A DNA stretch of 64,000 bases from Mobula hypostoma (Eukaryota): NCBI RefSeq assembly GCF_963921235.1, contig NC_086115.1, positions 56,420,001 to 56,484,000 on the forward strand. Direction: 5' to 3'. The notes beneath the pieces are model-generated. The model made no database searches, was not told the DNA's origin, and saw only the letters and a list, made by a program, of their open reading frames with translations. This document shows positions 931 to 39,223 of the stretch, in pieces (position 1 is the first letter of the stretch; each line of letters begins with the position of its first letter). Both the position numbers and the translations under genes were made by a program.

Positions 931-2536
931 ATATTAAGGGAGAGGAGATGTTGGAGTCGTTAAAATACATTAGGACAGATAAGTCCCCGGGGCCTGACGG
1001 AATATTCCCCAGGCTGCTCCACGAGGCGAGAGAAGAGATTGCTGAGCCTCTGGCTAGGATCTTTATGTCCTCGTTGTCCACGGGAATGGTACCGGAGGAT
1101 TGGAGGGAGGCGAATGTTGTTCCCTTGTTCAAAAAAGGTAGTAGAGGTAGTCCGGGTAATTATAGACCAGTGAGCCTTATGTCTGTGGTGGGAAAGCTGT
1201 TGGAAAAGATTCTTAGAGATAGGATCTATAGGCATTTAGAGAATCATGGTCTGATCAGGGACAGTCAGCATGGCTTTGTGAAGGGCAGATCATGTCTAAC
1301 AAGCCTGATAGAGTTCTTTGAGGAGGTGACCAGGCATATAGATGAGGGTAGTGCAGTGGATGTGATCTATATGGATTTTAGTAAGGCATTTGACAAGGTT
1401 CCACACGGTAGGCTTATTCAGAAAGTTAGAAGGCATGGGATCCAGGGAAGTTTGGCCAGGTGGATTCAGAATTGGCTTGCCTGCAGAAGGCAGAGGGTGG
1501 TGGTGGAGGGAGTGCATTCAGATTGGAGGATTGTGACTAGTGGTGTCCCACAAGGATTTGTTCTGGGACTTCTATTTTTTGTGATTTTTATTAACGACCT
1601 GGATGTGGGGGTAGAAGGGTGGGTTTGCAAGTTTGCAGACAACACAAAGGTTGGTGGTGTTGTAGATAGTGTAGAGGATTGTCAAAGATTGCAGAGAGAC
1701 ATTGATAGGATGCAGAAGTGGGCTGAGAAGTGGCAGATGGAGTTCAACCCAGAGAAGTGTGAGGTGGTACACTTTGGAAGGACAAACTCCAAGGCAGAGT
1801 ACAAAGTAAATGGCAGGATACTTGGTAGTGTGGAGGAGCAGAGGGATCTCGGGGTACATGTCCACAGATCCCTGAAAGTTGCCTCACAGGTGGATAGGGT
1901 AGTTAAGAAAGCTTATGGGGTGTTAGCTTTCATAAGTCAATGGATAGAGTTTAAGAGTTGTGATGTAATGATGCAGCTCTATAAAACTCTGGTTAGGCCA
2001 CACTTGGAGTACTGTGTCCAATTCTGGTCACCTCACTATAGGAAGGATGTGGAAGCATTGGAAAGGGTACAGAGAAGATTTTCCGGGATGCTGCCTGGTT
2101 TAGAAAGTATGCATTATGATCAGAGATTAAGGGAGCTAGGGCTTTACTCTTTGGAGAGGAGGAGGATGAGAGGAGACATGATAGAGGTGTACAAGATAAT
2201 AAGAGGAATAGATAGAGTGGATAGCCAGCGCCTCTTCCCCAGGGCACCACTGCTCAATACAAGAGGACATGGCTTTAAGGTAGAGGGTGGGAAGTTCAAG
2301 GGGGATATTAGAGGAAGGTTTTTTACTCAGAGAGTGGTTGGTGCGTGGATGCACTGCCTGAGTCAGTGGTGGAGGCAGATACACTAGTGAAGTTTAAGAG
2401 ACTACTATACAGGTATATGGAGGAATTTAAGGTGGGGGCTTATATGGGAGGCAGGGTTTGAGGGTCGGCACAACATTGTGGGCCGAAGGGCCTGTACTGT
2501 GCTGTACTATTCTATGTTCTATGTTCTATGTTCTAT
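931..2536 (+). mobile_element. 5'-truncated CR1 LINE (RT domain + 3'UTR)
   Basis: ORF 852..2387 has KSPGPDG, NYRPVSL, DFSKAFDKV, GVPQG and YKTLVRPHLEYC motifs; catalytic FADD mutated to FADN; frameshift near the end; (TTCTATG)n tail 2510-2536. Confidence 0.95.
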
Positions 2537-9459: not shown

Positions 9460-10490
9460 ACTGCATCTCCTCCATTTCCCATACATCTGCTCAGTCTAGC
9501 TTCCTGCCGCCTTATTAGTGATAGAGTTCCACTTGTCCTTACTTACCACCCATCAGCCTCTGCACCCACAGCATTATCCTCCCGTAACTTATACTATCTC
9601 CAAAGGGCTCCTACTACTAAACGTATTTTTACTCCCCACCCCCAACCCCTCTGCTCTCCGCAGGCATCATCTCTCTGCAATTCCCTTGTCCATTCGTCAC
9701 TCTCTGCTGATCTCCCTCCAAGCACTTATCCCTGCAAGTGGCCTAAGTGCTACATCTGCCCATACACCTCCTCCCTCACTGCCATTCAGGGCCCCAACCA
9801 GTCTTACCAGGTGAGGCAACGCTTCACCCGTGAATCTGCTGGGGTTGTCTATTGCGTCTGGTGCTCCTAATGTGGCCTCCTCAACATTGGTGAGACCCAT
9901 TGTAAATTGGGGGAGGCTTCGTTGAGCACCTCCACACCATCTGCCACATGCAGGACTTCCGGGTGGCCAAACATTTTAATACTGATTCCCATTTCCCTTC
10001 CAACATGTCAATCCATAGCCTCCTCTTGTGCCAAAATGAGGCCATCCTCAGGGTGAAGGAGCAACAGCTTGTATTCTGTCTAGATAGCCTCCAATTTAAT
10101 GGCACAATTATCAATTTCTCCCGGTAAAAACATTTCCCCTCCTCCCTCATCTGTTCCCCACTCTGGCCTTTTACCTCTTCTCATCTGCCTATTACTTTAC
10201 ACAGGGTTCCCTCCACCTTCCTTTTCTCCTATGGTCCACTCCCCTCCCGTAACAGATTCTTTCTTCTCCAGCCCTTGACCTTTCCCCACCTGCCTTGCTT
10301 CACTGATCACCTTCCAGTTAGCCTCTTTTCCTCGGCCCCCCCCCCAACTGTTTTGTTCTGACATCTACCCGCTTCCTTCTCAGTCTGGAGAAACGTCTTG
10401 GCCCAAAACTCTTTTCCATAGATGCTACCCAACCCCACCATTTTGTGTGTGTTGCTTTGGATTTCCAGCACCTGCAGACTTTTTCATGTT
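9460..10490 (+). mobile_element. Penelope-like element fragment (GIY-YIG endonuclease + tail)
   Basis: Decayed VVYCxxC..C...IGET...VAKHFN motif; C/T-rich tail and CAGCAxCTGCAGA end; homologous copies at 27320-27795, 34330-35250, 41385-42560 and 51640-52502. Confidence 0.8.
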
Positions 10491-11516
10491 TGCTATTGTG
10501 TTTTAGTTTAAACATTTTTAAATATTGGCAAATTGGTTTATTATTGTCACATGATACAGTAAAAAAACTTTTTTTTGCATGCCATCCATATAGATCATTA
10601 CATTACAACAGTGAGTCGAGGTAGTACAAGGGAAATAGCAGAACGCAGAAGAAATTGTGCAGGGAGCAGTCTCATCTAGCTTTGCCTCTGGATCTCAGAC
10701 ATTTAAAAATCTCTCATATTTCTTATGGCTATGCTGCTGAGAGGCTGGGATACTTTGGGCCAGTAACATTAGTTCTTTGTGTCCTAAGTAAAGACTGGTT
10801 GGAGGAATCCAGGTCAACAAGGTCTAGTCCATTATCTGTCAACTCTACAGAAAACATTCCTTTATCATTTAGTCACTGTAACATAAGTCAATGGTAAATA
10901 AGTTCTCAACAATTTATCAAATGTCAGCAAATTAATTGATAGTTGAGTTTTTAGCCAATGGACTGAAAATCAGAATTAATAAAACAGAATTGTCAAGCTG
11001 CCTATCTTCACAAAGCTACAACCTGTAAAGTTTGACTAACAGGTATGCACCTGATTTGTGAACAATGGCAAATAAATCAGCTGAAATTATATTATTTCTT
11101 AACTAAACAAAATTTCAGTTTCCACCTATAGGAATTTTTTTTAATTTTCAGTAAATGCACAGCAATTTAGTTTGTGCAAGAAAATGTACTCATGAATAAT
11201 GCATTGATTAATATTGTCATTCTTCCACAGAATGGGGAACCCATCTCTTTCAGCTAAAGGTTCATTATGGTGATGACTCTTTATAGTTATATTTTCTAAC
11301 CAAGAAGATGGAAACTAGTGAAGTTGCTCAGTATATTCTTTCTGAAGCACTGTCTTTTAAAAGTATGGCAATTCATATTTACCACTGAAAAATATAGCTT
11401 GAAAGCATTTTGTTTTGTTTAGTCATTTTTAGATACAATCAATGCCAGTTCAGCAAGAAGATCCAGTAGGTCAAGTCCCCTACAGGTGGTTTAAAAGTCT
11501 GGTATTGTACTTTTAC

Positions 11517-11687
11517 TTAGTATTCATCAAGAGCATCAGTTCGAGGGATGGATAATCCTCGCTCCTTTAATGCTTCACTTTTTGCCTTTTCTGCCTCTTG
11601 CTTTTCATGCTGCTGAACTCTCTGAGCTTCCAGAATCTCCTCGATTGACACTCGCTGCAAAGGGGTATCGGTCTCCCTCTCTAGATC
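11517..11687 (-). CDS. LSM1: LSM1 coding exon 4 (171 bp incl. TAA; DLERETDTPLQRVSIEEILEAQRVQQHEKQEAEKAKSEALKERGLSIPRTDALDEY*)
   Basis: LSM1 C-terminal helix ending LDEY; CAG acceptor; total CDS 46+69+116+171=402 nt = 133 aa. Confidence 0.96.
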   Translation of the reverse strand, partial: DLERETDTPLQRVSIEEILEAQRVQQHEKQEAEKAKSEALKERGLSIPRTDALDEY

Positions 11688-11898
11688 CTGTGAGGATAAT
11701 GTCAGTCATTTAACCATCACAAAGAAACTGGCAAGTTTAAACATTGTGAGACAATTACTTTACTAAATGAATTAGAAGCAAACTACAGTCTATTGAATTA
11801 AACTGCAAGACTGAATCTGCATGCAAAGTCTTCCCCATACAAGCAATAATTGAATCCATTTTAAAAAATCCATGAATTGAATATTTCATGAAACTTAC

Positions 11899-12014
11899 TA
11901 TTTCCCCCAGAAGCACCACATTTTCCCCTCGGACAACGAAAATCCCTCTTGGAATATCACCGTACTTCCTTCCTACATGGATTCGCTCCACCGTCCGATG
12001 AAGAACCAAATTAG
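11899..12014 (-). CDS. LSM1: LSM1 coding exon 3 (116 bp, ANLVLHRTVERIHVGRKYGDIPRGIFVVRGENVVLLGEI)
   Basis: Sm2 motif (VRGENV); CAG acceptor and GTAAGT donor; overlaps ORF 11755..12009. Confidence 0.97.
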
Positions 12015-12379
12015 CTGCAATATGGAGAGGGTGTGTGTTAAGGAATTAGCACAACTGAATACCAAATGTCTCTAGTCATAAAAGACATAATGCGTTAATT
12101 AATCCAAATAGTAAAGTACAATTCTCAATAAAATTGATTTTTTAGGTTGCCATTGCTCCGCAGTTTTGAAGCTGGATCATTCTTGCCTTAGACAAACATG
12201 ACTCTTAAATTATGTTTTATTTAAATATACAGTACAAAATGCAAAATAAAAATCTCAACTGGAGTAGACAAACCAAACGACCAGAGTACCAATCTAGATT
12301 AATTGGGACAAGTGGGATTCTGAACTTTTAGGGTGCATATCAAAACTAAAGGATTTAAAGAAATTTATATTTACATCCC

Positions 12380-12785
12380 TTCAAGAGGAACACAACCATT
12401 GAGGCTTTCCTGCCTCAATGACCTGGAGAGCCATGTTGGCTGGAGAGAGGGCTTTATACTTCGGCTCTTGATAGGGTCACCCATGCCAAACAGGTTAAAG
12501 GGTAGAGGACAGACTAAGAGTAGTCCACTATCCTCCAGGTTCGGGGGTTCAGCTCAGGGCTAACAACCCTGGCTGGTAAAACAAAACTGTTACAGAAACA
12601 GCAATGAGGAATTCTACATCTGAGTGCAATGGTATTCCTGAGTCTCCACCCGAGACTTGCGTGACTGACAGTGGTGAAAACTGGGTGGAAGCTACTGACA
12701 TGATGAAGGAAGCCGTGAACGCTGCCAGAGATGAAGTACCTTCACTGCTCTCTCAAATGCCAGCGGCGTAATGGGCAAAAGAAGA
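12380..12785 (+). mobile_element. Short non-autonomous element derived from an RTE (Rex3/Expander-like) 5'UTR; second copy at 63145-63540
   Basis: The two copies align (CCTCAATGACC...TAGGGTCACCCA..CAAACAGGT...GGGGGTTCAGCTCAGGGC...AAAACAAAACTGTTACAGAAACAGCAA). Confidence 0.65.
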
Positions 12786-12982
12786 ATATTTATATCACAT
12801 TTTATTACCAAACCTGATTAGTTGAACAGTACAAATGAAATGACGTTGTCTCAAAATGTTCACTGTTTTTCTCTCTAGGTTTTCACTCTCTCTATGGATA
12901 CTGCTCGACCTACACAGCATCATCAGCATTTTCTGCTTAACACAGTTAAATAATAGTCATTTGTTACTGTACCAATACTTAC

Positions 12983-13051
12983 CAAACTGATCCACACTCC
13001 TCAAATATCCTATTAATGTTCTTCCATCTCGAAGTACAACTAAATGCTTTT
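12983..13051 (-). CDS. LSM1: LSM1 coding exon 2 (69 bp, KKHLVVLRDGRTLIGYLRSVDQF)
   Basis: Sm1 motif; pyrimidine tract/CAG acceptor and GTAAGT donor; phase 1-1 fits the neighbouring exons; absent from the ORF track. Confidence 0.96.
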
Positions 13052-14064
13052 CTGCAAAAGGAAAAATGAACATTTTAAGTGATACAAAGTATTCTGAAAC
13101 ATCATTCCTGATAACTGGAACTAATGTTAATTTCTAACTATAGTCACTACTAATTTCCAGTTCTATCCTGAAAGAGAGAAAGGATGCAAAGGAAACAGAA
13201 GTAAATGGATAAGAACATCAGCTCAGATTTGATCTGATAAGAGGTTGGTTTTATTGCAAAAATCTGTGAATATATTCACATTAAATCAAATGCATAAATC
13301 CACAAAATTGTAATGTACAGAGGTTAGTAGGTAGTATACAAATAAATGTTAAGCTTTAACACAAATGAAGTAATAATTTATGAGATTCTGAAACTATTTT
13401 TGCACCTGTACCAACACTGCCTTATTCTAACCTCTTTAACATTACTTACCTCCTTCACACTGCTCACATTCTCCTCCTCCTCTAATTTTCAACTCATAAA
13501 ACTTTTCTGTTTGTGCCCTATTCCACCCAAAGAATTGCTCAACCATTATCCTGTTCTTACTGGTTACGGTTGCCCTAATGCATCCTACTTTAGGGCTTCA
13601 GTCTTGTTCTCTAACTACCCCAAATCCACTTTCAGACTCTCCAATCCTTTTATGAATTATGCCTGCCCTTCAATGTCAGCCATATCCTCAGCTGCCTTGG
13701 CCCACTCTCTCGAATTCTCCCTCTGCATTCCTTTGCTCCTTTATGTTAAGGCCTTTATAAAGCTACCACCCAAACCAAATTTATCCTCATCTTTGCATGA
13801 TGGTATCATTTGATGGATATTCCCATAAATAATGTTTTGGATTAAATAAAATAACATCATTATTAAAATAATGGACAAATGGATTTCAATTAACTAATGG
13901 GGCAAAGATCGTCTCCAGTGATCTGAATCCCAAAGAAGGGTCTTGGCCTGGAACATGGACTGCTTATTCATTTCCATCGATGTTGCCTGACCTGATGAGT
14001 TTCTACAACATTCTATGGGTGTTAATCTGCAGAATTAATTATTTTACTAAAACTTGTAATAAAA

Positions 14065-16975
14065 CCATAAGAAATAGAAACAGAACTAGGCCATTGCTTG
14101 GCCCGTTGAATCTGCTCTACAATTTCATCATGGCTGATCCAATTTTCTTCTCAGCTCCAATCTCCTGCCTTCTCCCCATATCCCTTCATGCCTGATCAAA
14201 GAAGAACCTATCAACCTCTGCCTTAAATATATGAAACCCCTTTTTACCGGGCGTCTCTAAAAACACGGCTGGTTAGCCCCTCACTAAGAAGCCAATGGAC
14301 TCAGTGGTGGGAAAACCACCTTTCTCGAACTCCGTATTTCTAGGGTTAATATGACTTGGATCCTACCAGACCAGGTGAGCCAGGGTGTTTTAACCACCTG
14401 CATCCCAATTTGAGAAAATACTGTGTAAATGCAATTACCTGTCAGCAAGAAATAACACATCATACACTGCATATAATTATAAGAAAGGTGTACTTATGAA
14501 TGCCACATAATCAAACAGTTATTAAAGAAGAATGAAAAAGGGAAAAAAAATAAAAGGGTCCATTATATTCAAAGCAGTCCAATCTGCACAAAGGTGGTGC
14601 TCAGATCTTTCAAGAGCTGGAGGTGTCCATGTACTCAGAGCGCCAACTCCTATTCACCAATCATTGATAGAACTTTTCCATTTGGACCCCATCAAATCAC
14701 ACATTCTGGTTGGATCGAATCCTACTGCCAGTTCTCTTGATCATCTTCTCTCTCCACCTACCACCGAAAAGGGCCTTGACTCCTATAGTGTCCATCACAA
14801 AACCTCTCTGCCCAGATCTCTCTAGAACCTTCTCCCAATTCCACCTTCCTGATTGGCTGACCTGACTTTCCTAAGCTGATCACAACCTCTTATCTTTAAT
14901 AGTAACCCAAATACTACTACCAGCAGAACACACTGCTTTTACACAAACCAATTAAATGAAATATCCCACAGCATTAGCAGTAAACACTTTGTAAAATCTT
15001 AACCAGGGCATTACATACATGTAAAGGCCTGGTCTCCACAGCCACCTGAATTCCACAGATACACCTATCTCTGGCAAAAGAAATTCCTCCTCATCTTCTA
15101 AAAGGACGCCCCTCTATTATGAGGCTGTGCCCTCTGGTCTTAGACTCTCCATTCATAGGAAACATCCTCTCCACATCTACTCTATCAAGACCTTTCACCA
15201 TTCAACAGATTTCAATGTGGTCACCCCCTCATTCTTCTGAATTCTAGTGAACACAGGCCCAGAGTCATCAAACGCTCTTTATATGAAAAGCTATTCACTC
15301 CTGGAATAATTTTCTTAAACCTCCTTTGAACCCTCTCCACTTTCAGCACATCCTTTCTAAAATAAGGAGCCCAAAAATGCTCACAATACTCCAAGTGAGG
15401 CCTCACCAGTGCTTTATAAAGTCTCAAAATTACATCCTTGCTTTTATATTCTAGTTCTCTTGAAATGAATGAAACATCACATTTGCCTTCTTCAGTATAG
15501 ACTTAACTTGCAAATTAACCTATAGGGAATCTTGCACAAGGACTCCCAAGTCCCTTTGCATCTCAGTTTCTTGTATTTTCTCTCCATTTAGAAAATGTTC
15601 AACCCTTTCATTTCTTCTACCAAACTGCATGATCGTACACTTCCCAACACTGCATTCCATCTATCTCTTCTCCTAATCTGCCTGTCCTTCTGGAGCCTCT
15701 CTACTTCCTCAAAAATACCTGCCCCTCCACTTATCTTTATATCATCTGTAAACTTTGCAACAAAGCCATCAATTCCATCATCCAAATCATTTACATATAA
15801 CATAAAAAGAATTGGTCCCAATACAGACCGCTGTGGAAAACCACTAGTCACCTGCAGCCAACTAGAAAAGGCTCCCTTTATTTCCACTCTTTGACCCTGC
15901 CAATCCGCCATTGCTTTATCCAAGCTAGACTCTTTCCTGCAATACCATGGGCTCACAGCTTGTTAATCAGCCTCATGCGTGGCACCTTGTCAAAGGCTTT
16001 CTAAAAATCCAAGTACACAACATCAACTAATTCTCCTTTGTCTATCCTGCTTGTTAATTCTTCAAATAATTCCAACAGATGTCAGGCAAGATTTCCCCTT
16101 GAGGAAACCATGTTGACTACAGCCTATTTTATCATGTGTCTCCAAGTTTCCTGAGACTTCATCCTTAATAATCAACACCAACATCTTCCCAACCACTGAG
16201 GTCAGACTAGCTGGCCTATAGTTTCCTTTCTTTTGCCTTTCTCCCTTCTTGTAGAGTAGAGTGACTTTTGCAATTTTCTCGTCTTACGGAACCATTCCAG
16301 AATCTAGTGATTCTTGAAAGATCATTACTAATGCCTCCACAATTTCTTCAGCCACCTCTTTCAAAACCTTGGGATGTACTAGTTGGTCCAGGTGACTTAT
16401 CTAACTTCAGACCTTTCAGTTTCCCAAGAACCTTCTCTCTAGCTATGGTAACTTCACACACTTCATGACCCCTGACACCTGGAACTTCCAACACACTGCT
16501 AGGGCCTGACACAGTAAACAGTGATGCAAAATACTTATTCAGTTCACCTGCCATTTCCTTTTCCCCCCATTACTACCTCTCCAGCATCATTTTCCAGTGG
16601 TCCAATATCCATTCTCACCTCTCTTTTACACTTTACGTATCTGAAGAAACCTATAGTATCCTCTTTAATATTATTGGCTAGCTTACTTCTGTATTTCATC
16701 TTTACCTTCTTAATGACCCTTTTAGTTACCTTCTGCTGGTTTTTAAAAGCATCCCATTCCCCTAACTTTCCACTAATTTTTGCTCTATTAAATGCCCTCT
16801 CTTTAACTTTCATATTGGCTTGGACTTCTCCTGTTAGCCACAATTGTGTCATCTTTCCTCTAGAACACTCCTTCCTCTTTGTGATGTATATAATCCTGTG
16901 TCTTCTGAATTCCAGCCATTGCTACTCTGCCGTCATCCCTGCCAGTGTTCTTTTCCAATCAATTCTGGCCAAATT
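14065..16975 (-). mobile_element. Decayed CR1 LINE in LSM1 intron 1, interrupted by a solo LTR
   Basis: ORFs 15221..15427 (YKALVRPHLEYC), 15588..15956 and 16348..16554 (DKSPGP); many stops and frameshifts. Confidence 0.9.
14232..15015 (-). mobile_element. Solo LTR (784 bp), probably Gypsy-type
   Basis: Minus strand reads TGTAATGCCC...GGGGGTTTCA (TG..CA with short inverted ends); 4-bp TSD TATA/TACA; splits an otherwise colinear CR1 3' end. Confidence 0.7.
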
Positions 16976-17737
16976 CAACAATTCCATAGATTTGTCAGGC
17001 ATAGATGTTGTTAATATGAATGACAAAAAAAACCTGTTTCCAACAAATAGTTTCTTTAGAATTGCATTATCTTGTTAGTGATCTAAAATAATAAAAAGCA
17101 AAACCCTTTCAATTTGTAACAAACTCCTTCATGAAACTTATAATGCTTATGAAGCTATTTTCCTTGAAAGCATGTGAAATAAAGGCTTCTGTCAATGTTG
17201 ATTTAATGGTCCAATTCCTTTTATCCTCTAGCACAGCACACATTGAATACATCACAGAGACAATCCTTGGAGATTCTAAACAGTTTTGTAAGGCAGAAAC
17301 ATTTTGTTAGACAGCATTATTTCTGCTGATAAATTTATTTAAGGTGTTCTTTGCTTGGAACATAAAATCAAAATTATTTGTAAGTCTGTAATTTATGAAT
17401 ACTACATATACAATTGTGAAATGCAGCAGTGTCTCAAGGGCAAAGCAGCAGTATCCACTTCATGAGTCCCATTGTAACCAAACTTGCAATCGTTCTCCAC
17501 AGTGTTACCCGGATGAGTGTTTGTCACTTATACAATATCTATTATGAAAATGGCTCACTGCTACATGGTTTTTCTGTAAACAGATTAAATTTTTTTTTAT
17601 TGAATACTAATAGCCCTTCAACTTAAAGGCAGCAAAAGAATTCTTTCGTTTAGAAATAATGGGGACAAAATAGAGATATATTGCATGCTAACATTTTCTT
17701 CATATTTAATGCAGAATGAAACATTTTTAAATTTTAT

Positions 17738-17739
17738 AC

Positions 17740-17780
<41 letters not shown>
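17738..17780. repeat. Compound (TA)n(GA)n microsatellite in a Rex1 3'UTR relic
   Basis: Seen directly. Confidence 0.9.
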
Positions 17781-19148
17781 CTTCTTACTATAATTTACAG
17801 CTTTTATTCTTACGTATTGCATTGTAATGTTGCTGCATAATGACAAATTTCTCGACATATACCAGTGATATTAAACCTGATTCTGATTTGTGCAAAAGTC
17901 TTGTAGATCAGCAGTGCCTCTGCTAAATACTCCGTTAACACCCTGCATGCTTTCAAATTAGCAATTTATGGGGAATACCTCTGACTTCGGCAGAGTATTT
18001 ATTCATGATTACACCTCTAATGCATCTTGGAATGTTGTCTCTCATTAAATACAGATAATATATAAATATTTTGTGTGGTGCAAGGTCAAGATTGAGAAGC
18101 AGAAAGAGTGTCCAATCACAGTGTCCACAGTTGTTGAACTGTCATCAACAAGTCTGATTAAAGTGAGTAATCGAAATGCGGCTCATCATTCTTTTTAGAT
18201 CAAACTGTATGTCAAGTTTTTACAGTGGGGTTTGTATGAATAGTTTTATTTGGTGTTTCAAATTTTAGCCCTCAGTGTAAATAAAAAAGGGACTAATCAC
18301 GTGAACGCATTAACCACAAAAGGGTTTGTGTATCATCCCAAATCAAGAGTTTAACTTAAGCTATTTATCTCAATCCAAAACATATTCATATGTTTAAAAT
18401 ACAAAAATGTTGTTAAGTTTATTTTGGCTAGGCTATAATTATGGCAGGGACCGACTTCTGTCATCACCACGTGCCGTGTCGTATGACGTGGACAATCACG
18501 GTCAATGACCATGATTGTTCTTGGCATATTTTTCTACATAAGTGGTTTGCCATTGCCTTCTTCTGGGCAGTATCTTTACAAAGTGGTGACCCCAGCCATC
18601 ATCAATACTCTTCAAATTGTCTACCTAACGTCATAACCAGGGCTTGTGATATGCACCACCTGCTCCCATAGCTTCACGTGACCCTGATCTGGGGGGCTAA
18701 GCAGGGGCTCCACCTTACCCAAAGGTGACCTGTAGGCTAGTGGAGGGTAGGAGCACCTTGTACCTCGTTTGGTAGAGACATATCTGCACCCTACCACCCA
18801 TTTGACCTCTGTAGGTTTTTCGACTGAAAATTCTGAAAGAGATATAAGAAACCAGTTAGGTTGCACAGCATTACATTTATGCCAAGTGGAGAATAATGTA
18901 AATGAAAATTATGATAAATATGTAAATTACTGCAGGACCAAGCCATTTGGCCTCTTGAGTCTGTTCTGCCGTTTACTAAGGTTATAGGTGATCAGATTTT
19001 ACACTGCACACTCTTGTCTAGTTGTGGTAAACTTTCAATCCCTTACTGACTAAGAAGCTATTAAACACTGGTCTTTAAAATGCTGGAAGACTCTAACTCC
19101 ACCACCTTTTCTGAGGTACAGAGTACCAAAGACACACAACCCTTAGAG

Positions 19149-19227
19149 CAGGGGTTCCCAACCTTTTTTATGCCATGGACCAATACCATTAAGTAAGGGA
19201 TGGTGGACTCCAGATTGATAACCTCTG
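19149..19227. mobile_element. About 80-bp hAT-type MITE; other copies at 35038-35117, 49366-49445, 60027-60097, 61759-61832 and 63793-63873
   Basis: TIR CAGGGGTTCCCAACC; perfect 8-bp TSD CCTTAGAG here, GT(A/G)TAGTA at the 35 kb copy. Confidence 0.9.
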
Positions 19228-20337
19228 CCTTAGAGAAGGAACTTCATCTCATCTCTGTGTTAAGTGGGTAAATTTTAAAGACCACTTTAAGAGGAAACAT
19301 AATGTCCACATGTACTCCTCGTTAGGGTGTTTTTGCGGTTACCACATAGAGCAATTAACTTCATTAACTAACTTCAGCCACCAATCTTCAGATCTGAATA
19401 TGGACTGCAGATTACATTTAAAATGCAGCTCTGGACAATGGGTTCCTAAGAGCCGTGAACCACAGTTAACTGGAAGATCAGACAACGCTGATTCAAACTC
19501 ATTTGGGTGTCTAAGGTGTGGGTGTGAAGAGGGAGATGTGAAAATTGTGTGGATTTCAAAGGAAGCAAAAAGAACCAATACTCCATAATTTTAATTCCTT
19601 CCTTAGACTGCCTATTACATGCCTTTTTTTTACATTTTGGAAATCTTATAATAATGTAACATTATCAAGTATCAGAATCACAATGAATATTACTATTTTC
19701 TATTCAAGAGAAGCTCCAAAGACTTATAGATTCAAGGATTTGTGTAACAAAAAGGAGCTTTAAGGCAAGAATAATTCACAAAATTGTTCAACCCTTTTCA
19801 AGTTATTAGTCACTTTCCTTTGTTAAAATGTATATTGAGTAACCAGTCTTTCTAACAATGTCCCAGGGACCAATACTCTCCCCATTTTTCCAAGCATGAC
19901 CAAAATCTAATAGCTAATTCATTAAAGATATGATTTTTGTTTACAGAACAGTTTGCTGTAAAGTCAACTGGTGCATATTATGGAAAACAGTTGATATAAT
20001 ACCAGTTCCACTTTGGTAGTGCTAAAGCACCTATGCTGTTTATCCTTTTGTTTAAACACAGCAGATCTGGGACTCCTTGATGTGACGAGCAGGCATAAAG
20101 GATATGAAGTGTTCCAACCCCGGCATGAATATACTGAGCAAAATGTTGATCATGTTTTGCATTTCAACAATGCTTCCAAGGACTTGTAAATATGTACTCA
20201 GAGTAGCTTGGTGTGTTTGATCTTTTATGCAACCAAGTTCTTCCTATACTTTAACCTTCACTGATTTTCCATAACATGCAGCTATCTTTTGACCAGGCTG
20301 TCGTACATAACCAGCACCTAAAATAGATCAGCATACA

Positions 20338-21934
20338 CAGTGGTATGCAAAAGTTTGGGCACCCCGGTCAAAATTTCTGTTTCTGTGAATAGCTAAGCGA
20401 GTAAAAGATGACCCGATTTCCAAAAGGCATAAAGTTAAAGATGACACATTCCTTTAATATTTTAAGCAAGATTACTTTTTTATTTCCATCTTTTATAGTT
20501 TCAAAATAACAAAAAAGGAAAAGGGCCCGAAGCAAAAGTTTGGACACCCTGCATGGTCAGTACTTAGTTACACCCCCTTTGGCAAGTAAGTGCTTTCTGT
20601 AGCCAGCTAAGAGTTTTTCAATTCTTGTTTGGGGGATTTTCGCCCATTCTTCCCTGCAAAAGACTTCTAGTTCTGTGAGATTCTTGGGCCGTCTTGCATG
20701 CACCGCTCTTTTAAGGTCAATCCACAGATTCTCAATGATGTTTAGGTCGGGGGATCATGAGGGCCATGGCAAAACCTTCAGCTTGCACCTCTTGAGGTAG
20801 TCCGTTGTGGATTTTGAGGTGTGTTTAGGATCATTATCCTGTTGTAGGAGCCATTCTCTTTTCATCTTCAGCTTTTTTTTTTACTGACGGTGTGATGTTT
20901 GCTTCCAGAATTTGCTGGTATTTAATTGAATTCATTCTTCCCTCTTCCAGTGAAATGTTCCCCGTGCCACTGGCTGCAACACAAGCCACCCACGTGCTTA
21001 ACAGTTGGAGAGGTGTTCTTTTCATAAAATTCTACACCCTTCTTTCTCCAAACATACCTTTGCTCCTTGCGGCTAAAAAGTTCTATTTTAACTTCATCAG
21101 TGCACAGGACTTGTTTCCAAGATGCATCAGGCTTGTTTAGATGTTCCTTTGCAAACTTCTGACACTGAATTTTGTGGTGAGGACGCAGGAAAGGTTTTCT
21201 TCTGATGACTCTTTCATGAAGGTCATATTTGTGCAGGTGTCACTGCACAGTAGAACAGTGCACCACCACTCCAGGGTCTGTTAAATCTTCCTGAAGGTCT
21301 TTTGCAGTCAAACAGGGGTTTTGATTTGCCTTTCTAGCAATCCTATGAACAGTTCTCTCAGAAAGTTTTTTTGGTCTTCCAGACCTCAACTTAACCTCCA
21401 CTGTTTCTGTTAACTGCCATTTCTTAATTACATTACAAACTGAGGAAATGGCTACATAAAACTGCTTTGCTATCTTCTTATAGCCTTCTCCTGCTTTGTG
21501 GGCATCATTTATTTTAATTTTTAGAGTGCTAGGCAGCTGCTTAGAGGAGCCCATGGCTGCTGATTGTTGGGACAAGATTTGAGGAGTCAGGGTATTTATA
21601 AAGCTTTGAAATTTGCATCACCTGGCCTTTCCTAACGATGATTGTGAACAAGCCATAGCCCTAACAAGCTAATTAAGGTCTGAGACCTTGGTAAAAGTTA
21701 TCTGAGACTTCAAATCTCTAGGGGTGCCCAAACTTTTGCATGGTGTTTCTTTCCTCTTTTTCCACTCTAAAATTGTATAAAAGAAAAATAATACACTAAT
21801 CTTGCTTAAAATGTTGAAAAGAATGTTTCATCTTTAATTTTATGACTTTTGGAGATCAGTTCATCTTCTACTCACTTAACTATACACAGTAACAGAAATT
21901 TTGACCGGGGTGTCCAAACTTTTGCATGCCACTG
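20338..21934 (-). mobile_element. Near full-length DD34E Tc1 transposon of IR/DR type (transposase pseudogene 20557-21554)
   Basis: About 210-bp TIRs starting CAGTGG(T/C)ATGCAAAAGTTTGG, each with outer and inner direct repeats; GRPKK AT-hook, [11 protein letters not shown]...SPDLNIIE (34-aa spacing), KGGVTKY*; stops and deletions; right TA intact, left TA mutated to CA. Confidence 0.95.
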
Positions 21935-24699
21935 TAAACGCCAAGGAGGCCAGTGCTAGACTGATTTTTGGGTTGAGGACATGTACATTTAGCAATTTAA
22001 TGCTCAATTATAAATTGCACATTGCACATTTAGATGGAGATGTAATGTGAAGATTTTTACTCGTGCATATGAAGCATGCAAGTAATACAGTCAATTCAAT
22101 TGATTGCGGCTACCATTCTTCACATCTGAAAATATATTGTGCAGCGCTGGACAATGGGCTCCTAAAAGCTGTGAATCCCAGACCAAGCAATGATGATTAA
22201 AATTCATTTGGATGTCTGTGGTGTGGATGCGAATCAGGAAGTGTGAACGTTGTATGTGGTTTCAAAAAAAGCATTATCCATACACTGTAAATATGGAGTT
22301 GTCCTTTGATGTTTGGCACATAAAATATCCAACCCCACGTTGGGCCAGAAACAGCTTTCGACTGAAAGCGTCTCCATAAGATGCCTGCAGTACCTTGTTT
22401 TGTCATATAAAGAAGCTGCTTTGTATCTACCAGTAATTTTCTCCAGTGACTTCATTCACGCAACAAAAGCCAGGACAGATTTCTACCCAGACCTTGAGAA
22501 ACTTCAGCCCACGATCCTCCTGGACAATTCAATGTTAAAATAGCAAAAGACCAAATCCTCTGAAAAATCCTGAAAGGCAAGGATGGAGTATGGAAAGTTA
22601 GGGCAGCATGGTAATCACTTTACAGGGCCAGTGATCACCGACTGGAGTTCAATTCCCTCCATTGTCTGTAAGGAGCTTGTATGTTCTCTCTGTGACTGTG
22701 TGGGATTCCTCTGGGTGTTCTGGTTTATTCCACTTTCCAAAGACATATGGTTGGGGCTAGTGAGTTGTAAGTGATGCTGTGTTGGCACCAGAAGCATGGT
22801 GATACTTGCGGGCAGCCCCCAGCATAACCCTTACAGATTTGATTTGATACAGCACAGCACATTTTACTGTATGTTTCAATGTACGTACATGTGATAAGTA
22901 AAGCTAATCTTTAATCTTTTCAGTGAGTCCTCCATCTGAGTAAGGATTTGTGATAACCAGTACACTGCTTCATTAGAGGGTCAAGCACAGGACTTCTTGG
23001 TAATTTCTCCCAATCTAGGCAATGGTACTTGTCAAATTATCTCTTCATCTGAGCAAGAGATTATAAGAGAGTCTGCTATATCCACACCATAATGGCTACT
23101 TATGACTGTGGGTCTGATCCATTCTGTTATCTCCATCAGTCTGGCTCCAAAGCAAAAAATGGCAACAGAAACAGTGATGCACGTTTCAGACAACCTGAGG
23201 ACTCTCAACCAACAGGAGGAATAGAGTATCCACAGCTTCTAGTCTCCTTTGAGGATCACCATAATTAGCACCTGTGAAGATACTCTTCATATAACTGCTA
23301 GCAAAAACCAGAACTTGATTGATGAGGGCGTGCGGGAGATCCAGGAATTAACTGAAAGCATATGTTTAGTTCCTTTGTAACGTAATTCCACCACACCTCA
23401 AGGAAAATGAAACAGCTCAGCCTTAACAGAAAACTACAGTCTATAGAGCAGATGGTTGGTGGAAGGAGAACAGCAAGTCCAGTAACTCACCAATAATCAT
23501 GACATATGGATTCATAAGCACCGTCAAGACTACTATAGGCCAGACACCCAAGAGTCCACCCTGCTATGAGCCAAGAAGACAGTATTTTTGCTGAAGTTTT
23601 AAAAAAATTAACCCTTAAAGGAGACAGTATTCTTGTCTAAAACACAGCAGAGTAATTCACAAACTCATTTCCCACATTAGGGGAACTCAGAAACACCATA
23701 ATTATTATTTCTTTCAAGAACAGAAACAAATCAATTGCATTAACCGCAGAGGATCAATGTCTCTGCCAGCATTCACCTCAGCCAACTCCTGCCAATGATC
23801 AAAGAGCTGTTCCCTGAACCACAGTGTGACTTAACCATCTCAAATCAAAATGGATAAGATTTAATGGCATATCAACCCTATTCAGTGGATTCATGACTTT
23901 TATCAGTTTTTGCAAATTTCATCCTTCAATTGGCATCATATATCCGAAGCAGATTTGGAAAAATTACAGTCTATGCTTTCGAGAACCAATTCTGAAATAA
24001 AACCAGGAAAGGTCGGTGGGGGTGCATGTGTGCATTCACATCAATGACCTTTCATTGCTGTCAATGATCTGAAATATTAACATTATTTCTGACTCCAGTA
24101 ATGCTGTTCCATGCACTTAGTTCAGTATTTCCTGTTTTTATGTTTAAATTAACATTTCAGGTAATAAAAAGTTACTGACCTGAAATAATAGCCGTTATTT
24201 CCCCCTACATCAAAATCACCTCAACTGCTGAGCACTTTGTGTGTCGTTTTCCCCAAAATTTCAGATTTCTAGCATCTTTAGCACTTTACATTTGCAGAAG
24301 AAATTCTGATCAGATTTTTAATTATGTAGGGAAATTATCGTCAATTAAAATTAATAGCGAAGGAGGTTGCAATTTTTCTCTTGCCTGATCACCAGAACTG
24401 ATCAGGTTTCTAACACAAGACACCCAGCGGACTTTGCCTGTGATCAGTATCTGATGTAGAAAACAAAGTGGAGAAATGATTTAAGAATATTCTCAAGCTT
24501 CCTTCAATAAAAAAAATGCAACATCACCAGAGACCGAGATCCCCTGAACCACCACAACTTGGATACGGAGCTTTCTGAATGGCATTGAGAACCTCAGTGG
24601 GACAGGACCGTAGAGGAGGCCAGCATGAATGGCGGGACTGCAGCATAAACAAGCTGGGATCTGCCAATGAAGCATTTACCCTGTTTCCCTTTCCACAAT

Positions 24700-25356
24700 T
24701 CTAACTTAGTCAGCTGCATCATGGGCACTGGCCTCTGTAGTCTCCAGGACACCCGCAAGCAGTGAAGCCTCAAAAAGGCGGCATTCATCACCTATCGCCC
24801 AGGTTATGCCTTGTTCTCATTGCTACCATTATGAAGGCGCTACAGGAGCCTGAAGGCACACATTCAAAAGATTCAGGAACAGTTATTCCCCCCTGCCATG
24901 TATTTTCTGAATGGACATTGAACCCATAAACTCTACCTCACTTTTTAAAATTTCTATTTTTGCACTACTTAAATTTATTTTATATATTTACTGTAATTCA
25001 CGGTTTTTTCTCTATTATTTTGTACTGAATTGCACTGTTGCCGCAAGGACCATTTTCACGACACATACCAGTGATACATTCAGCCAGAGACTCATTCCAC
25101 TGAGATGCAACACAGAGTGTCATAGGAAGTCATTCCTGCCTGTGGCCATCAAACTTTACAACTCCTCCCTTGGAGGGTCAGACACCCTGAGCCAATAGGC
25201 TGGTCCTGGACTTATTTCCTGGCATAATTTACTTTTTACTATTTAACTATTTATGGTTTTATTACTATTTATTATTTATGGTGCAACTGGTACCAATTTC
25301 CCCCGGGATCAATAAAGTATGACTATGACTACGACTATATTAAACCTGATTCTGAG
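24700..25356 (+). mobile_element. Rex1-type 3' fragment with a second Rex1-type tail nested at about 25078-25336
   Basis: RKSFLPVAIKLYN C-terminus and (GACTAT)n tail inserted in the host tail CCAGTGATA..TTAAACCTGATTCTGA. Confidence 0.7.
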
Positions 25357-25709
25357 ATGCCTCCTGACCTGTTCATCATTTCCAGGACCTTAAGTTTTTA
25401 TTTAAGATTTCTAGCAGCTACTTTAAAAAAATCACTAACTAGCGAAGCAACTTCTTTCATCGGGCATCCGTGGAAGTACAGTATCTGCGATCTCATCGGA
25501 TACCTCAGACCCAAACGAAGGCAGCTTTGGTCCCGAAAGGCTGCCCAACAAGAGAACATGAAGCAAAAGCAGACGATGCTCCAAGTTTCCTGGGCTGGGG
25601 ATAAATACAAGCCTGGGTGTCAAGCAGTGGCACCACAACGAGGGCAAAGCTACCAGGACTCCGCCACGCAAGGGGAGGACGATTGAAGAAAGTGAAAGTG
25701 GCGCCTTAC

Positions 25710-25755
25710 TGTCAATGTCTTCAATCAGGCTGGCTGTGCCGGGCATATAGTTCAT
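25710..25755 (-). CDS. LSM1: LSM1 coding exon 1 (46 bp, MNYMPGTASLIEDID+1 nt)
   Basis: Encodes the vertebrate LSM1 N-terminus MNYMPGTASLIEDID; ATG at 25755-25753 in context CAAGATG; GTAAGG donor follows; lies in a CpG island. Confidence 0.96.
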
Positions 25756-25999
25756 CTTGCTCCGAAGCAACCATTGGACGTCACATGGTCCACAGGAAGA
25801 GGAGGCGACGTCGGAGCCGCGTCACTTCCGCCACCGCTGATCCTGGGCGCCCGGGTGCTCTCTCCTGCTGCCGTTAGCTCCTTCTCGGTGCAGCCGGCCG
25901 AGGTCGCATTCGCGGCGGAGTTATCCCCCGTCTGTTCCCGTGAATCCCTCTCCCCAACCGAAGGGCGGTTTCGCTGAGCGAGGGTCGGTGAGGTGTAAG

Positions 26000-26011
26000 A
26001 TGGCGGCTCGG
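26000..26011 (+). CDS. PRDX3: PRDX3 coding exon 1 (MAAR, 12 bp)
   Basis: Strong Kozak AAGATGG; ATG GCG GCT CGG followed by GTGAGG donor; phase 0 fits exon 2. Confidence 0.8.
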
Positions 26012-26744: not shown

Positions 26745-26871
26745 ATTTACAGGACATGTATAAGCATAAGGGGAGTTACAACAGCTTTGCAAACACAATG
26801 TATTAAGAAAAACTTGATGCACCGTCGGATTTCAACCCCTCTTGCAAACTATAAATGCAACTTTAGTACAA
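26745..26871 (+). CDS. PRDX3: PRDX3 coding exon 2 (mitochondrial presequence IYRTCISIRGVTTALQTQCIKKNLMHRRISTPLANYKCNFST)
   Basis: TTTTCAG acceptor, GTAAGT donor; R/K/S/T-rich with no acidic residues; ends FST like PRDX3 presequences; phase 0-1. Confidence 0.85.
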
Positions 26872-28307: not shown

Positions 28308-28449
28308 CTTATTCAAACTTTGCTCCTGCTGTTACCCAGCCCGCTCCCTTTTTCAAGGGCACTGCTGTAGTCAATGGTGAGTTCAAGGAAATCAGCCTGG
28401 ATGACTACAAAGGGAAATACCTGGTTGTTTTCTTCTATCCTCTGGATTT
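28308..28449 (+). CDS. PRDX3: PRDX3 coding exon 3 ([47 protein letters not shown])
   Basis: PRDX3-type APAVTQxAP mature N-terminus and FFYPLDF; TAG acceptor, GTAAGT donor; 142 bp. Confidence 0.97.
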
Positions 28450-33113: not shown

Positions 33114-33249
33114 TACTTTTGTTTGTCCGACTGAAATCATTGCTTTCAGTAACAAAGCAAGTGAGTTCCATGACGTAAACTGTGAAGTAATTGGTGTTTC
33201 TGTAGACTCTCATTTCTCTCACCTTGCCTGGATCAACACTCCAAAAAAG
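33114..33249 (+). CDS. PRDX3: PRDX3 coding exon 4 ([45 protein letters not shown])
   Basis: Peroxidatic Cys motif FVCPTE; T-tract/CAG acceptor, GTACAG donor; 136 bp. Confidence 0.97.
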
Positions 33250-33673: not shown

Positions 33674-33777
33674 AGTGGCGGTTTAGGGCACATGAATATA
33701 CCACTACTGTCCGATATAACAAAGCAAATGTCACGGGATTATGGAGTGCTACTGGAAAATGCTGGTATTGCTCTAAG
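33674..33777 (+). CDS. PRDX3: PRDX3 coding exon 5 ([35 protein letters not shown])
   Basis: GGLG motif; CAG acceptor, GTAAAG donor; 104 bp; absent from the ORF track. Confidence 0.96.
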
Positions 33778-36854: not shown

Positions 36855-37020
36855 AGGTCTTTTCATTATTGATGTTAATGGAATTATCAAGCACATAGGC
36901 ATCAATGATCTGCCTGTAGGTCGCAGTGCTGAAGAAACTCTGCGCTTAGTTAAGGCATTTCAATTTGTTGAAACCCATGGAGAAGTTTGCCCAGCAGAGT
37001 GGACCCCTAACTCTCCAACG
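36855..37020 (+). CDS. PRDX3: PRDX3 coding exon 6 ([55 protein letters not shown])
   Basis: Resolving Cys motif GEVCPAxW; CAG acceptor, GTATGT donor; 166 bp. Confidence 0.97.
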
Positions 37021-39169: not shown

Positions 39170-39223
39170 ATCAAGCCTTCCCCAGAAGCTTCCAAAGAAT
39201 ATTTTTCTCAAGTCAATGAATAA
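39170..39223 (+). CDS. PRDX3: PRDX3 coding exon 7 (IKPSPEASKEYFSQVNE*)
   Basis: YF motif; TTTTACAG acceptor; total CDS 741 nt = 246 aa. Confidence 0.95.
   Translation: MKPSPEASKEYFSQVNE

What the first reader, a model, noticed from the sequence alone, without database searches (positions are those of the whole stretch)
11517..26011. LSM1 in a non-canonical locus (head-to-head with PRDX3): candidate retained 2R ohnologue, 'LSM1b'
Seen: an intact 4-exon, 133-aa LSM1 immediately divergent from PRDX3. Established: human LSM1 is head-to-head with BAG4 near STAR at 8p11, while PRDX3 lies at 10q26 near GRK5 and BAG3. 8p11 and 10q26 belong to the FGFR1/FGFR2 paralogon. This protein has VLRDGRTLIGYLRSVDQFANLVLHRT, whereas the human protein (from memory) has LLRDGRTLIGFLRSIDQFANLVLHQT. 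The Y/V/R states resemble invertebrate LSM1, and the C-terminal helix also diverges. Inference: cartilaginous fish may keep a second LSM1 from whole-genome duplication, or the reciprocal copy. That would allow an alternative Lsm1-7-Pat1 decapping ring.
Basis: partly seen in the sequence, partly recalled or inferred. Interest (0 to 1): 0.72.

Follow-up and report, generated by a model that had tools for sequence, protein, structure and literature searches.

The report
Ray keeps an ancestral second LSM1
This devil-ray gene is a working copy of the mRNA-decay factor LSM1 that still sits beside PRDX3, as in amphioxus. Cartilaginous fishes carry it together with a second LSM1, whereas bony vertebrates, humans included, appear to have lost this copy and kept only the one beside BAG4.

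Summary
An intact four-exon, 133-aa LSM1 lies on the minus strand (25755 to 11517). Its ATG is 244 bp from the ATG of PRDX3, across a CpG-rich region. Spliced RNA contigs from two studies show it is transcribed.

The reading is largely right, with two corrections.

1. A second LSM1 ("c2", 74-77% identical) exists in the same genome and in 16 cartilaginous fishes, chimaera included.
2. The PRDX3-LSM1 pair is not a novelty. Amphioxus has the same head-to-head pair, so this is the ancestral chordate position.

- Elephant shark: PRDX3 <-> LSM1 -> GRK.
- Human: SFXN4-PRDX3-GRK5, with no LSM1.
- Cyprinids: BAG <-> LSM1 -> GRK.
- Whales: BAG4 <-> LSM1.

So two paralogous LSM1->GRK blocks exist, and bony vertebrates lost LSM1 from the PRDX3 block.

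The window's copy is the conservative one (dN/dS about 0.02). The c2 copy evolves faster, mostly in the C-terminal helix.

The 133-aa protein tree cannot resolve orthology, so the ohnologue claim rests on synteny. The paralogon of c2 and the idea of an alternative Lsm1-7 ring remain untested. Both genes are already annotated as LSm1, but I found no paper on the duplication.

The parts
10456..11516 (-). LSM1 3' UTR, about 1.0 kb. The far end is approximate and abuts a highly repeated SINE-like element at about 10342-10569.
   Evidence: Spliced contigs of X2, X1 and X5 extend down to 10456, 10570 and 10645 (table 8).
11517..11687 (-). LSM1 coding exon 4 (residues 78-133 plus stop): the C-terminal helical extension.
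   Evidence: The joint 11686/7 -> 11898/9 is seen in three runs.
11899..12014 (-). LSM1 coding exon 3 (Sm2 part of the Sm fold).
   Evidence: Both flanking joints are seen in RNA contigs.
12983..13051 (-). LSM1 coding exon 2 (Sm1 motif).
   Evidence: The joint 12014 -> 12983 is seen in three runs.
25710..25791 (-). LSM1 exon 1: 46 coding bases (25755-25710) plus at least about 36 bases of 5' UTR.
   Evidence: About 82 further letters lie upstream of exon 2 in contig record 1 of X1. The position of the 5' UTR is inferred, because exon 1 was outside the stretch laid.
25756..25999 (.). Shared 244-bp region between the LSM1 and PRDX3 start codons: a presumed bidirectional CpG-island promoter. A block conserved in ray, electric ray and sixgill-type shark carries GGAAGT/CTTCC, TGACGTC and CCAAT-like motifs.
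   Evidence: GC 0.64 and CpG observed/expected 1.0; alignment with L001, L007 and L014. The motif reading is from general knowledge and was not tested.
26000..26011 (+). PRDX3 exon 1 (four codons, donor GTGAGG).
   Evidence: The offset of the annotated CDS start in GCA_963921235.1; exon-chaining model.
26745..26871 (+). PRDX3 exon 2 (mitochondrial presequence). This is a model: the best splice sites among the solutions that give 246 aa.
   Evidence: Not checked with RNA.
28308..28449 (+). PRDX3 exon 3 (start of the mature protein, peroxidatic region).
33114..33249 (+). PRDX3 exon 4 (holds the FVCPTE peroxidatic cysteine motif).
33674..33777 (+). PRDX3 exon 5.
36855..37020 (+). PRDX3 exon 6 (resolving cysteine, VCPAEW).
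   Evidence: Best PDB hit is mitochondrial PRDX3.
39170..39223 (+). PRDX3 last coding exon with stop.

Best explanation
The stretch is a real, expressed LSM1 gene. It encodes the subunit that defines the cytoplasmic Lsm1-7 ring, which together with Pat1 binds the 3' ends of deadenylated mRNAs and promotes decapping. It is driven from a short CpG-rich bidirectional promoter shared with the mitochondrial peroxiredoxin gene PRDX3.

It is one of two LSM1 genes that all cartilaginous fishes examined carry. This copy (c1) keeps the ancestral chordate position, head-to-head with a mitochondrial-type peroxiredoxin as in amphioxus. It lies in the PRDX3-LSM1-GRK block that in human is SFXN4-PRDX3-GRK5 at 10q26, without LSM1.

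Bony vertebrates keep only the LSM1 of a paralogous block: BAG <-> LSM1 -> GRK in cyprinids and BAG4 <-> LSM1 in mammals. Most likely the LSM1->GRK pair was duplicated as a block in the early vertebrate genome duplications. Cartilaginous fishes kept both LSM1 copies, and bony vertebrates lost the PRDX3-linked one.

Shown here: gene structure, splicing, transcription, two paralogues, local synteny in 20 genomes, and strong purifying selection.

Inferred: whole-genome-duplication origin, loss in bony vertebrates, that c1 is the main housekeeping Lsm1 of these fishes, and that c1 and c2 both enter Lsm1-7 rings.
For: - Gene model and identity to the annotated LSm1 P0122.
- Best solved relatives are Lsm1 of S. 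pombe and S. cerevisiae at 89-93 bits, against 47 bits for LSm8.
- Spliced contigs in three runs from two studies.
- A second LSM1 clade in 16 chondrichthyans, including Mobula hypostoma and Callorhinchus.
- The c1 and c2 clades are each well supported and each includes the chimaera: 98/99 and 100/100.
- Amphioxus and all vertebrate copies share the same three intron positions, so c2 is not a retrocopy.
- Peroxiredoxin <-> LSM1 is seen in four batoids, four sharks, the chimaera and two amphioxus assemblies.
- The amphioxus peroxiredoxin has an Arg-rich N-terminal presequence.
- Callorhinchus has PRDX (253 aa) <-> LSM1 -> GRK (590 aa).
- The human gene order is SFXN4, PRDX3, GRK5 (PMC13488206).
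- Cyprinids have BAG <-> LSM1 -> GRK of 584 aa, and whales have a 457-aa BAG <-> LSM1.
- The lamprey has LSM1 -> GRK.
- c1 shows 30 synonymous and 0 non-synonymous differences between Mobula and Narcine, with omega 0.016 between ray and shark. Synonymous sites between c1 and c2 are saturated.
- The AU test disfavours c1 plus bony LSM1 as one clade (p = 0.04).
Against: - The protein is short and very conserved. With 51 sequences the vertebrate backbone collapses, and the AU test does not reject c1+c2 as sisters (p = 0.34).
- The p = 0.04 against c1+bony is borderline; with 42 sequences it was 0.26.
- c1 is overall more similar to mammalian LSM1 (84-85%) than c2 is (79-80%).
- The GRKs beside c1, c2 and cyprinid lsm1 could not be typed. 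Only their 17-aa first exon lies in the fetched loci.
- That the Callorhinchus GRK is GRK5 rests on its length and its PRDX3 neighbour.
- c2 was not shown to lie near BAG4, STAR or DDHD2, so its paralogon is unknown.
- No GRK exon lies within 10-11 kb downstream of c1 in the ray window, Narcine or Heptranchias.
- By exon similarity the amphioxus peroxiredoxin is as close to PRDX1 as to PRDX3.
- I did not verify that teleosts have a separate PRDX3-linked grk5.
Confidence: 0.7

Rival explanations
1. c1 is the true orthologue of bony-vertebrate LSM1. In the bony-vertebrate stem the gene, with a GRK, moved from beside PRDX3 to beside BAG4. On this reading c2 is the extra paralogue that bony vertebrates lack.
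For: c1 is closer to mammalian LSM1 overall than c2 is (84-85% against 79-80%), above all in the C-terminal part (71-73% against 56-62%). The tree backbone is unresolved. With 42 rows the AU test gave p = 0.26.
Against: It needs LSM1->GRK to move next to BAG4 while a GRK5 stays next to PRDX3 in human and chicken. The AU test with 51 rows gave p = 0.04 against c1+bony. In the first tree c2 grouped with bony vertebrates at 83/77. The higher similarity of c1 is explained by its very slow rate.
Confidence: 0.15
2. c1 and c2 arose by a segmental duplication of an LSM1->GRK segment in the chondrichthyan stem. This would be after the split from bony vertebrates and before chimaeras and elasmobranchs diverged. 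Both copies would then be co-orthologues of the single bony-vertebrate LSM1.
For: The AU test does not reject c1+c2 as one clade (p = 0.31 and 0.34). Both copies are confined to chondrichthyans in the databases searched. In Carcharodon both lie on the same 122-Mb chromosome.
Against: Bony vertebrates themselves show both blocks: PRDX3-GRK5 without LSM1, and BAG <-> LSM1 -> GRK. So the block duplication predates the bony/cartilaginous split. In the other species compared (Mobula, Stegostoma, Rhincodon, Chiloscyllium, S. torazame, Heptranchias, Pristis, Hypanus, Rhinoraja) c1 and c2 are on different chromosomes. Synonymous sites between c1 and c2 are saturated.
Confidence: 0.1
3. The gene is a dead or artefactual copy (pseudogene, assembly duplication) of no functional weight.
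For: None found.
Against: The frame is intact and the splice sites are canonical. Spliced transcripts are present. There are 0 non-synonymous against 30 synonymous differences between two ray orders. The same locus is present in nine independent assemblies.
Confidence: 0.01

Closest known systems
Tetrapod and teleost LSM1 (human LSM1 at 8p11, head-to-head with BAG4)
   Same: Both are 133 aa with the same four coding exons and the same three intron positions. The Sm core is 94% identical and the whole protein 84-85%. Both start head-to-head with another gene a few hundred bases away.
   Different: The partner gene is PRDX3, not BAG4. The block corresponds to human 10q26, not 8p11. c1 keeps V21, Y31 and R45 as in the invertebrate outgroups: all three in Lingula and oyster, V21 and Y31 in amphioxus. 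It is probably a paralogue, not the orthologue, of the human gene.
Chondrichthyan LSM1 copy 2 (for example P0228 of Mobula hypostoma, P0245 of Callorhinchus)
   Same: Same family, length and intron positions. It is present in the same genomes and its Sm core is 90-95% identical.
   Different: It is only 49-55% identical in the C-terminal 55 residues. Its dN is about 18 times higher over comparable splits, with C-terminal omega about 0.24. Its neighbours are an INPP5F-like gene upstream and, in Stegostoma, a GRK downstream. It has no peroxiredoxin partner.
Amphioxus peroxiredoxin <-> LSM1 pair (Branchiostoma floridae)
   Same: Head-to-head arrangement with 336 bp between coding starts. The peroxiredoxin is 234-235 aa with an Arg-rich N-terminal presequence.
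   Different: There is no GRK downstream; a kelch/BTB gene lies there instead. The peroxiredoxin subtype is not settled by exon similarity.
Arabidopsis LSM1A/LSM1B (from my own knowledge, not checked here)
   Same: An organism with two LSM1 genes, both of which can occupy the Lsm1 position of the cytoplasmic ring.
   Different: It is a plant lineage with a younger duplication and largely redundant copies. The ray pair is ancient and asymmetric in rate.
LSm8 (defines the nuclear Lsm2-8 ring)
   Same: An Sm-fold subunit that swaps with Lsm1 to change the function of the ring.
   Different: It is a much weaker match, 47 bits against 89-93 for Lsm1. It also lacks the long C-terminal helix.

Membership tests
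LSm1 (Sm-like protein, cytoplasmic Lsm1-7 ring subunit) | Sm fold (Pfam PF01423, LSM). | tested here: met
   Precomputed PF01423 on P0122 and its cluster.
LSm1 (Sm-like protein, cytoplasmic Lsm1-7 ring subunit) | Closer to Lsm1 than to Lsm8 or other Sm/LSm proteins. | tested here: met
   PDB search: Lsm1 of S. pombe and S. cerevisiae at 89-93 bits, LSm8 at 42-47 bits, SmG at 29 bits.
LSm1 (Sm-like protein, cytoplasmic Lsm1-7 ring subunit) | Long C-terminal extension after the Sm domain (the helix that crosses the ring and gates RNA entry). | tested here: inconclusive
   A 55-residue extension is present and aligns to yeast Lsm1 up to residue 116. Its helical structure and its position over the pore were not modelled here. 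The function is taken from 10.1101/2020.04.22.055376.
LSm1 (Sm-like protein, cytoplasmic Lsm1-7 ring subunit) | Assembles with Lsm2-7 and works with Pat1 in decapping. | not tested
   No complex prediction or experiment was done. This is inferred from 84% identity to mammalian LSM1.
LSm1 (Sm-like protein, cytoplasmic Lsm1-7 ring subunit) | Animal LSM1 gene structure: three introns at fixed positions and phases. | tested here: met
   The same exon boundaries reproduce the exact proteins in ray, electric ray, shark c1 and c2, lamprey, whale, cyprinid, pike and amphioxus.
Vertebrate whole-genome-duplication ohnologue pair | Duplication after the amphioxus split and before the crown of the group that holds both copies. 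| tested here: met
   Amphioxus lies outside all vertebrate LSM1 at 100/99. The c1 and c2 clades each contain the chimaera and elasmobranchs.
Vertebrate whole-genome-duplication ohnologue pair | Neighbouring genes duplicated with it (block duplication). | tested here: met
   LSM1 -> GRK is seen beside c1 (Callorhinchus), beside c2 (Stegostoma), in cyprinids and in the lamprey. The identity of each GRK was not determined.
Vertebrate whole-genome-duplication ohnologue pair | The copies lie on different chromosomes that belong to one recognised paralogon. | tested here: inconclusive
   The chromosomes differ in Mobula (66.7 and 162 Mb) and in most other species. Markers for c1 are PRDX3 and a GRK (human 10q26). 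The markers for c2 (an INPP5F-like gene and a GRK) do not assign it. Chromosome-scale paralogy was not tested.
Vertebrate whole-genome-duplication ohnologue pair | The gene tree places the duplication before the bony/cartilaginous split. | tested here: inconclusive
   The backbone is unresolved. AU p values are 0.34 (c1+c2), 0.04 (c1+bony) and 0.43 (c2+bony).
Conserved bidirectional (head-to-head) gene pair | Divergent orientation with less than 1 kb between the starts, in a CpG island. | tested here: met
   244 bp between ATGs, GC 0.64, CpG observed/expected 1.0.
Conserved bidirectional (head-to-head) gene pair | The arrangement is kept across distant species. | tested here: met
   Nine chondrichthyan assemblies and two amphioxus assemblies.
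Conserved bidirectional (head-to-head) gene pair | Shared regulation or co-expression of the two genes. | not tested
   Only LSM1 exons 2-4 were laid with reads, and contig depth cannot rank expression.

The most novel reading that the evidence does not exclude
Cartilaginous fishes run two different cytoplasmic Lsm1-7 rings. One is built on the ultra-conserved PRDX3-linked Lsm1. The other is built on the fast-evolving c2, whose changes are concentrated in the C-terminal helix that gates RNA entry in the yeast ring. On this reading the two rings select different mRNA 3' ends or different tissues. It is a subfunctionalised mRNA-decay system that bony vertebrates collapsed into one gene by losing the ancestral-position copy.
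Probability: 0.3. Interest if true: 0.65.

Novelty: new member of a known kind. Interest (0 to 1): 0.5.

Why it matters
LSM1 is treated as a single-copy core factor of mRNA decay in vertebrates. Three things follow from these results.

1. A whole vertebrate class carries two ancient LSM1 genes.
2. The human gene is probably not the one in the ancestral chordate position. The ancestral PRDX3-LSM1 bidirectional pair has survived from the amphioxus/vertebrate ancestor to rays and chimaeras, but was broken in bony vertebrates.
3. The LSM1->GRK pair gives a small, clean marker for the FGFR paralogon, and possibly a fourth GRK4/5/6-type lineage beside fish lsm1.

The two paralogues differ mainly in the helix that controls RNA access to the Lsm1-7 ring. 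This makes them a natural experiment on that gate. The result is of moderate interest: a solid evolutionary finding, not a new kind of system.

Tried and rejected
- **Retrocopy origin of c2: rejected.** The gene spans 16.3 kb in Mobula and has the same three introns.
- **Pseudogene or assembly artefact for c1: rejected**.
- **Typing the GRKs beside c1, c2 and cyprinid lsm1: failed.** The fetched loci hold only the invariant 17-aa first exon.
- **Typing the amphioxus peroxiredoxin by exon similarity to solved structures: inconclusive.** PRDX1 scored 78-83 bits and PRDX3 65-80 bits. Only the presequence-like N-terminus points to the mitochondrial type.
- **Resolving orthology with maximum-likelihood trees: failed.** The 42-row tree weakly joined c2 with bony vertebrates (83/77). 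The 51-row tree collapsed.
- **Neighbours of Pristis c2:** none within 10 kb.
- **DNA of c2 from the window's own genome:** Loci from the look-up of encoding contigs cannot be sent to the reads tools, so c2 expression was not examined.
- **Notes of the scan:** a search for GRK5 found nothing. LSM1 was noted only for this stretch.
- **Literature:** searches for LSM1 ohnologues or paralogues in vertebrates, and for PRDX3-LSM1 linkage, found nothing relevant. The 'lsm1' hits were LSM12 or LSM14.
- **Callorhinchus c1:** the cDNA-derived protein P0128 could not be mapped exactly onto L007, so that CDS was left out of the rate analysis.
- **Not used:** complex prediction and structure prediction. 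No binding claim is made.
Full report
**1. What is in the window**

LSM1 lies on the minus strand with four coding exons: 25755-25710, 13051-12983, 12014-11899 and 11687-11517. All introns are GT-AG, and the 402-nt CDS gives 133 aa.

The protein is identical to database protein P0122. That protein is annotated as LSm1 in Hypanus sabinus, Narcine bancroftii and two further batoid assemblies. In assembly GCA_963921235.1 the gene spans 14,239 bp, exactly as in the window. The same assembly carries a protein named for Mobula hypostoma. So the window is from that devil ray or a near-identical genome.

The best solved relatives are Lsm1 of S. pombe and S. cerevisiae at 89-93 bits, against 47 bits for LSm8.

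PRDX3 starts at 26000 on the plus strand. A seven-exon, 246-aa model fits the annotated length. One of its exons scores 105 bits against mitochondrial PRDX3 and 82 bits against PRDX1.

The two start codons are 244 bp apart. This region has GC 0.64 and CpG observed/expected 1.0.

**2. Expression**

Contigs of three runs were laid on the stretch: X1 and X2 with no mismatch, and X5 from a second organism and study. They join 11686/7 to 11898/9 and 12014 to 12983. They continue about 82 letters beyond exon 2 and run about 1 kb into a 3' UTR. A fourth run covers the introns continuously, as DNA would. The gene is therefore transcribed and spliced as modelled. Contig depth says nothing about expression level.

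**3. A second LSM1**

A full-length search found a second LSM1 type, here called c2. It is 74-77% identical to the window's protein (c1). It occurs in the same genome (P0228, on a 162-Mb chromosome) and in many elasmobranchs.

A search with c2 extended the list to 16 species, including a Callorhinchus entry, P0245.

The c2 gene spans 16.3 kb in Mobula. It has the same three intron positions as c1, lamprey, whale, cyprinid, pike and amphioxus LSM1. It is therefore a genuine gene duplicate, not a retrocopy.

**4. Local synteny**

This is the core of the argument.

| Species or group | Arrangement | Calls |
|---|---|---|
| c1: four batoids, four sharks | 246-271-aa peroxiredoxin <-> LSM1 | 16, 53 |
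| c1: Callorhinchus | PRDX (253 aa) <-> LSM1 -> GRK (590 aa) | 30 |
| Human (chicken has the same genes together) | SFXN4, PRDX3, GRK5 in that order, no LSM1 | 39, 40 (PMC13488206, PMC10976558) |
| Two Branchiostoma floridae assemblies | 234-235-aa peroxiredoxin <-> LSM1, 336 bp apart | 24, 69 |
| Whales | 457-aa BAG protein <-> LSM1 | 32 |
| Three cyprinids | BAG (395-397 aa) <-> LSM1 -> GRK (584 aa) | 47, 48 |
| Sea lamprey | LSM1 -> GRK | 21 |
| c2: Mobula, Stegostoma, Heptranchias | INPP5F-like gene -> LSM1, and -> GRK (588 aa) in Stegostoma | 19, 22, 54 |

The amphioxus peroxiredoxin has an Arg-rich N-terminus that looks like a presequence.

The simplest reading has four steps.
- An ancestral PRDX3 <-> LSM1 pair existed before vertebrates.
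- An LSM1 -> GRK adjacency arose in early vertebrates.
- The block was duplicated.
- Bony vertebrates then lost LSM1 from the PRDX3-GRK5 block, and tetrapods lost the GRK from the BAG4 block.

**5. Phylogeny**

With 42 sequences, c1 (92/90) lay outside a group made of cyclostomes, c2 and bony vertebrates. In that tree c2 joined bony vertebrates at 83/77.

With 51 sequences the c1 clade (98/99) and the c2 clade (100/100) are firm, and each includes the chimaera. The backbone, however, is a polytomy. The AU tests gave:
- p = 0.34 for c1+c2 as one clade;
- p = 0.04 for c1+bony vertebrates;
- p = 0.43 for c2+bony vertebrates.

The tree shows that the duplication predates the chondrichthyan crown and postdates the amphioxus split. 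It does not settle orthology, so that rests on synteny.

**6. Rates**

| Comparison | Result |
|---|---|
| c1, Mobula vs Narcine | 30 synonymous, 0 non-synonymous differences |
| c1, ray vs sixgill-type shark | dS 0.51, dN 0.008, omega 0.016 |
| c2, Stegostoma vs Heptranchias | dN 0.148, dS about 2 (saturated), omega about 0.07 overall, 0.24 in the C-terminal 55 codons |

The Sm core is 90-95% identical between c1 and c2. The C-terminal part is only 49-55% identical.

c1 is thus the conservative copy. This also explains why it looks more like human LSM1 overall (84-85%) than c2 does (79-80%).

**7. How it most likely works**

c1 should be the Lsm1 subunit of the cytoplasmic Lsm1-7 ring, acting with Pat1 in decapping-dependent mRNA decay. 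This is inferred from family membership.

In the S. pombe ring, the C-terminal region of Lsm1 restricts binding to RNA 3' ends, and its removal lets the ring scan along RNA (10.1101/2020.04.22.055376). In yeast, Pat1 docks on Lsm2 and Lsm3 (PMC3915908).

The c1/c2 differences are concentrated in this helix. Two rings with different RNA selectivity are therefore plausible, but untested.

Transcription probably starts in the shared CpG island. A block just upstream of the LSM1 ATG is conserved from rays to a sixgill-type shark, and it holds ETS-, CRE- and CCAAT-like motifs. The motif reading is from general knowledge.

**8. Open points**
- The paralogon of c2 is unknown. I could not show BAG4, STAR or DDHD2 near it.
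- The GRKs could not be typed.
- Two unchecked notes of this scan bear on the picture. One places a BAG4 gene with a WW domain on another piece of this genome. The other proposes a second SAC2/INPP5F paralogue. They fit the picture but do not prove it.
- No paper describing vertebrate LSM1 duplicates or the PRDX3-LSM1 pair was found.
- RefSeq already names both genes LSm1.

**9. Verdict**

The gene is a new member of a known family, of moderate interest.

Noticed in passing
Proteins P0154 and P0201 (Denticeps); P0183, P0184, P0193; P0155, P0161, P0149; loci L006, L011-L013: Teleosts have two LSM1 types that form one teleost clade. Denticeps keeps both. Cyprinids, herring and catfish keep the type that in cyprinids lies beside BAG and a GRK. 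Pike, salmonids and eels keep the other type, which in pike lies beside a DSPc phosphatase and a PID-domain gene. This looks like reciprocal loss after the teleost duplication.
   Followed up: partly
window 10342-10569 and 12394-12735: Two short elements collect enormous contig depth and many partial matches in all four runs. One lies at the far end of the LSM1 3' UTR and the other in LSM1 intron 2. They behave as a very abundant, transcribed SINE-like repeat family.
   Followed up: no
window 852-2387 (+), 15221-16196 (-), 37858-38946 (+), 55469-56755, 20557-21575 (-): Long ORFs of LINE reverse transcriptases and a Tc1/mariner-like transposase remnant lie here. Several sit inside the 12.7-kb LSM1 intron 1 and inside the PRDX3 intron before its last exon. 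The element at 55524-56771 was noted separately by the scan.
   Followed up: no
P0245 (Callorhinchus c2), P0243 (Heptranchias c2): Some c2 proteins change residues that are invariant in every other LSM1 compared. For example, 'YGDIPRG' becomes 'YSNITRG' in the chimaera and 'YGDITRG' in Heptranchias. This suggests relaxed or shifted constraint on the Sm2 region.
   Followed up: no
L003 and L015 against window and L014: Over roughly comparable divergences, synonymous divergence is about four times higher in c2 (dS about 2) than in c1 (dS about 0.5). Either c1 has constrained silent sites or the two regions mutate at different rates.
   Followed up: no
Carcharodon carcharias proteins P0038 (c1) and P0244 (c2): Both LSM1 copies are reported on the same 122,117,421-bp chromosome in the great white shark. 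They are on different chromosomes in the other species compared.
   Followed up: no
L002 (Petromyzon marinus): Lamprey LSM1 is preceded on the same strand by an RNA polymerase I A49-like gene and followed by a GRK. Neither a peroxiredoxin nor a BAG gene lies beside it.
   Followed up: no
L011-L013 (cyprinids): The GRK beside cyprinid lsm1 may be the zebrafish 'second GRK5 paralogue' that PMC3307776 attributes to the teleost duplication. Its linkage to BAG and LSM1 suggests it could be an older paralogue lost in tetrapods.
   Followed up: partly
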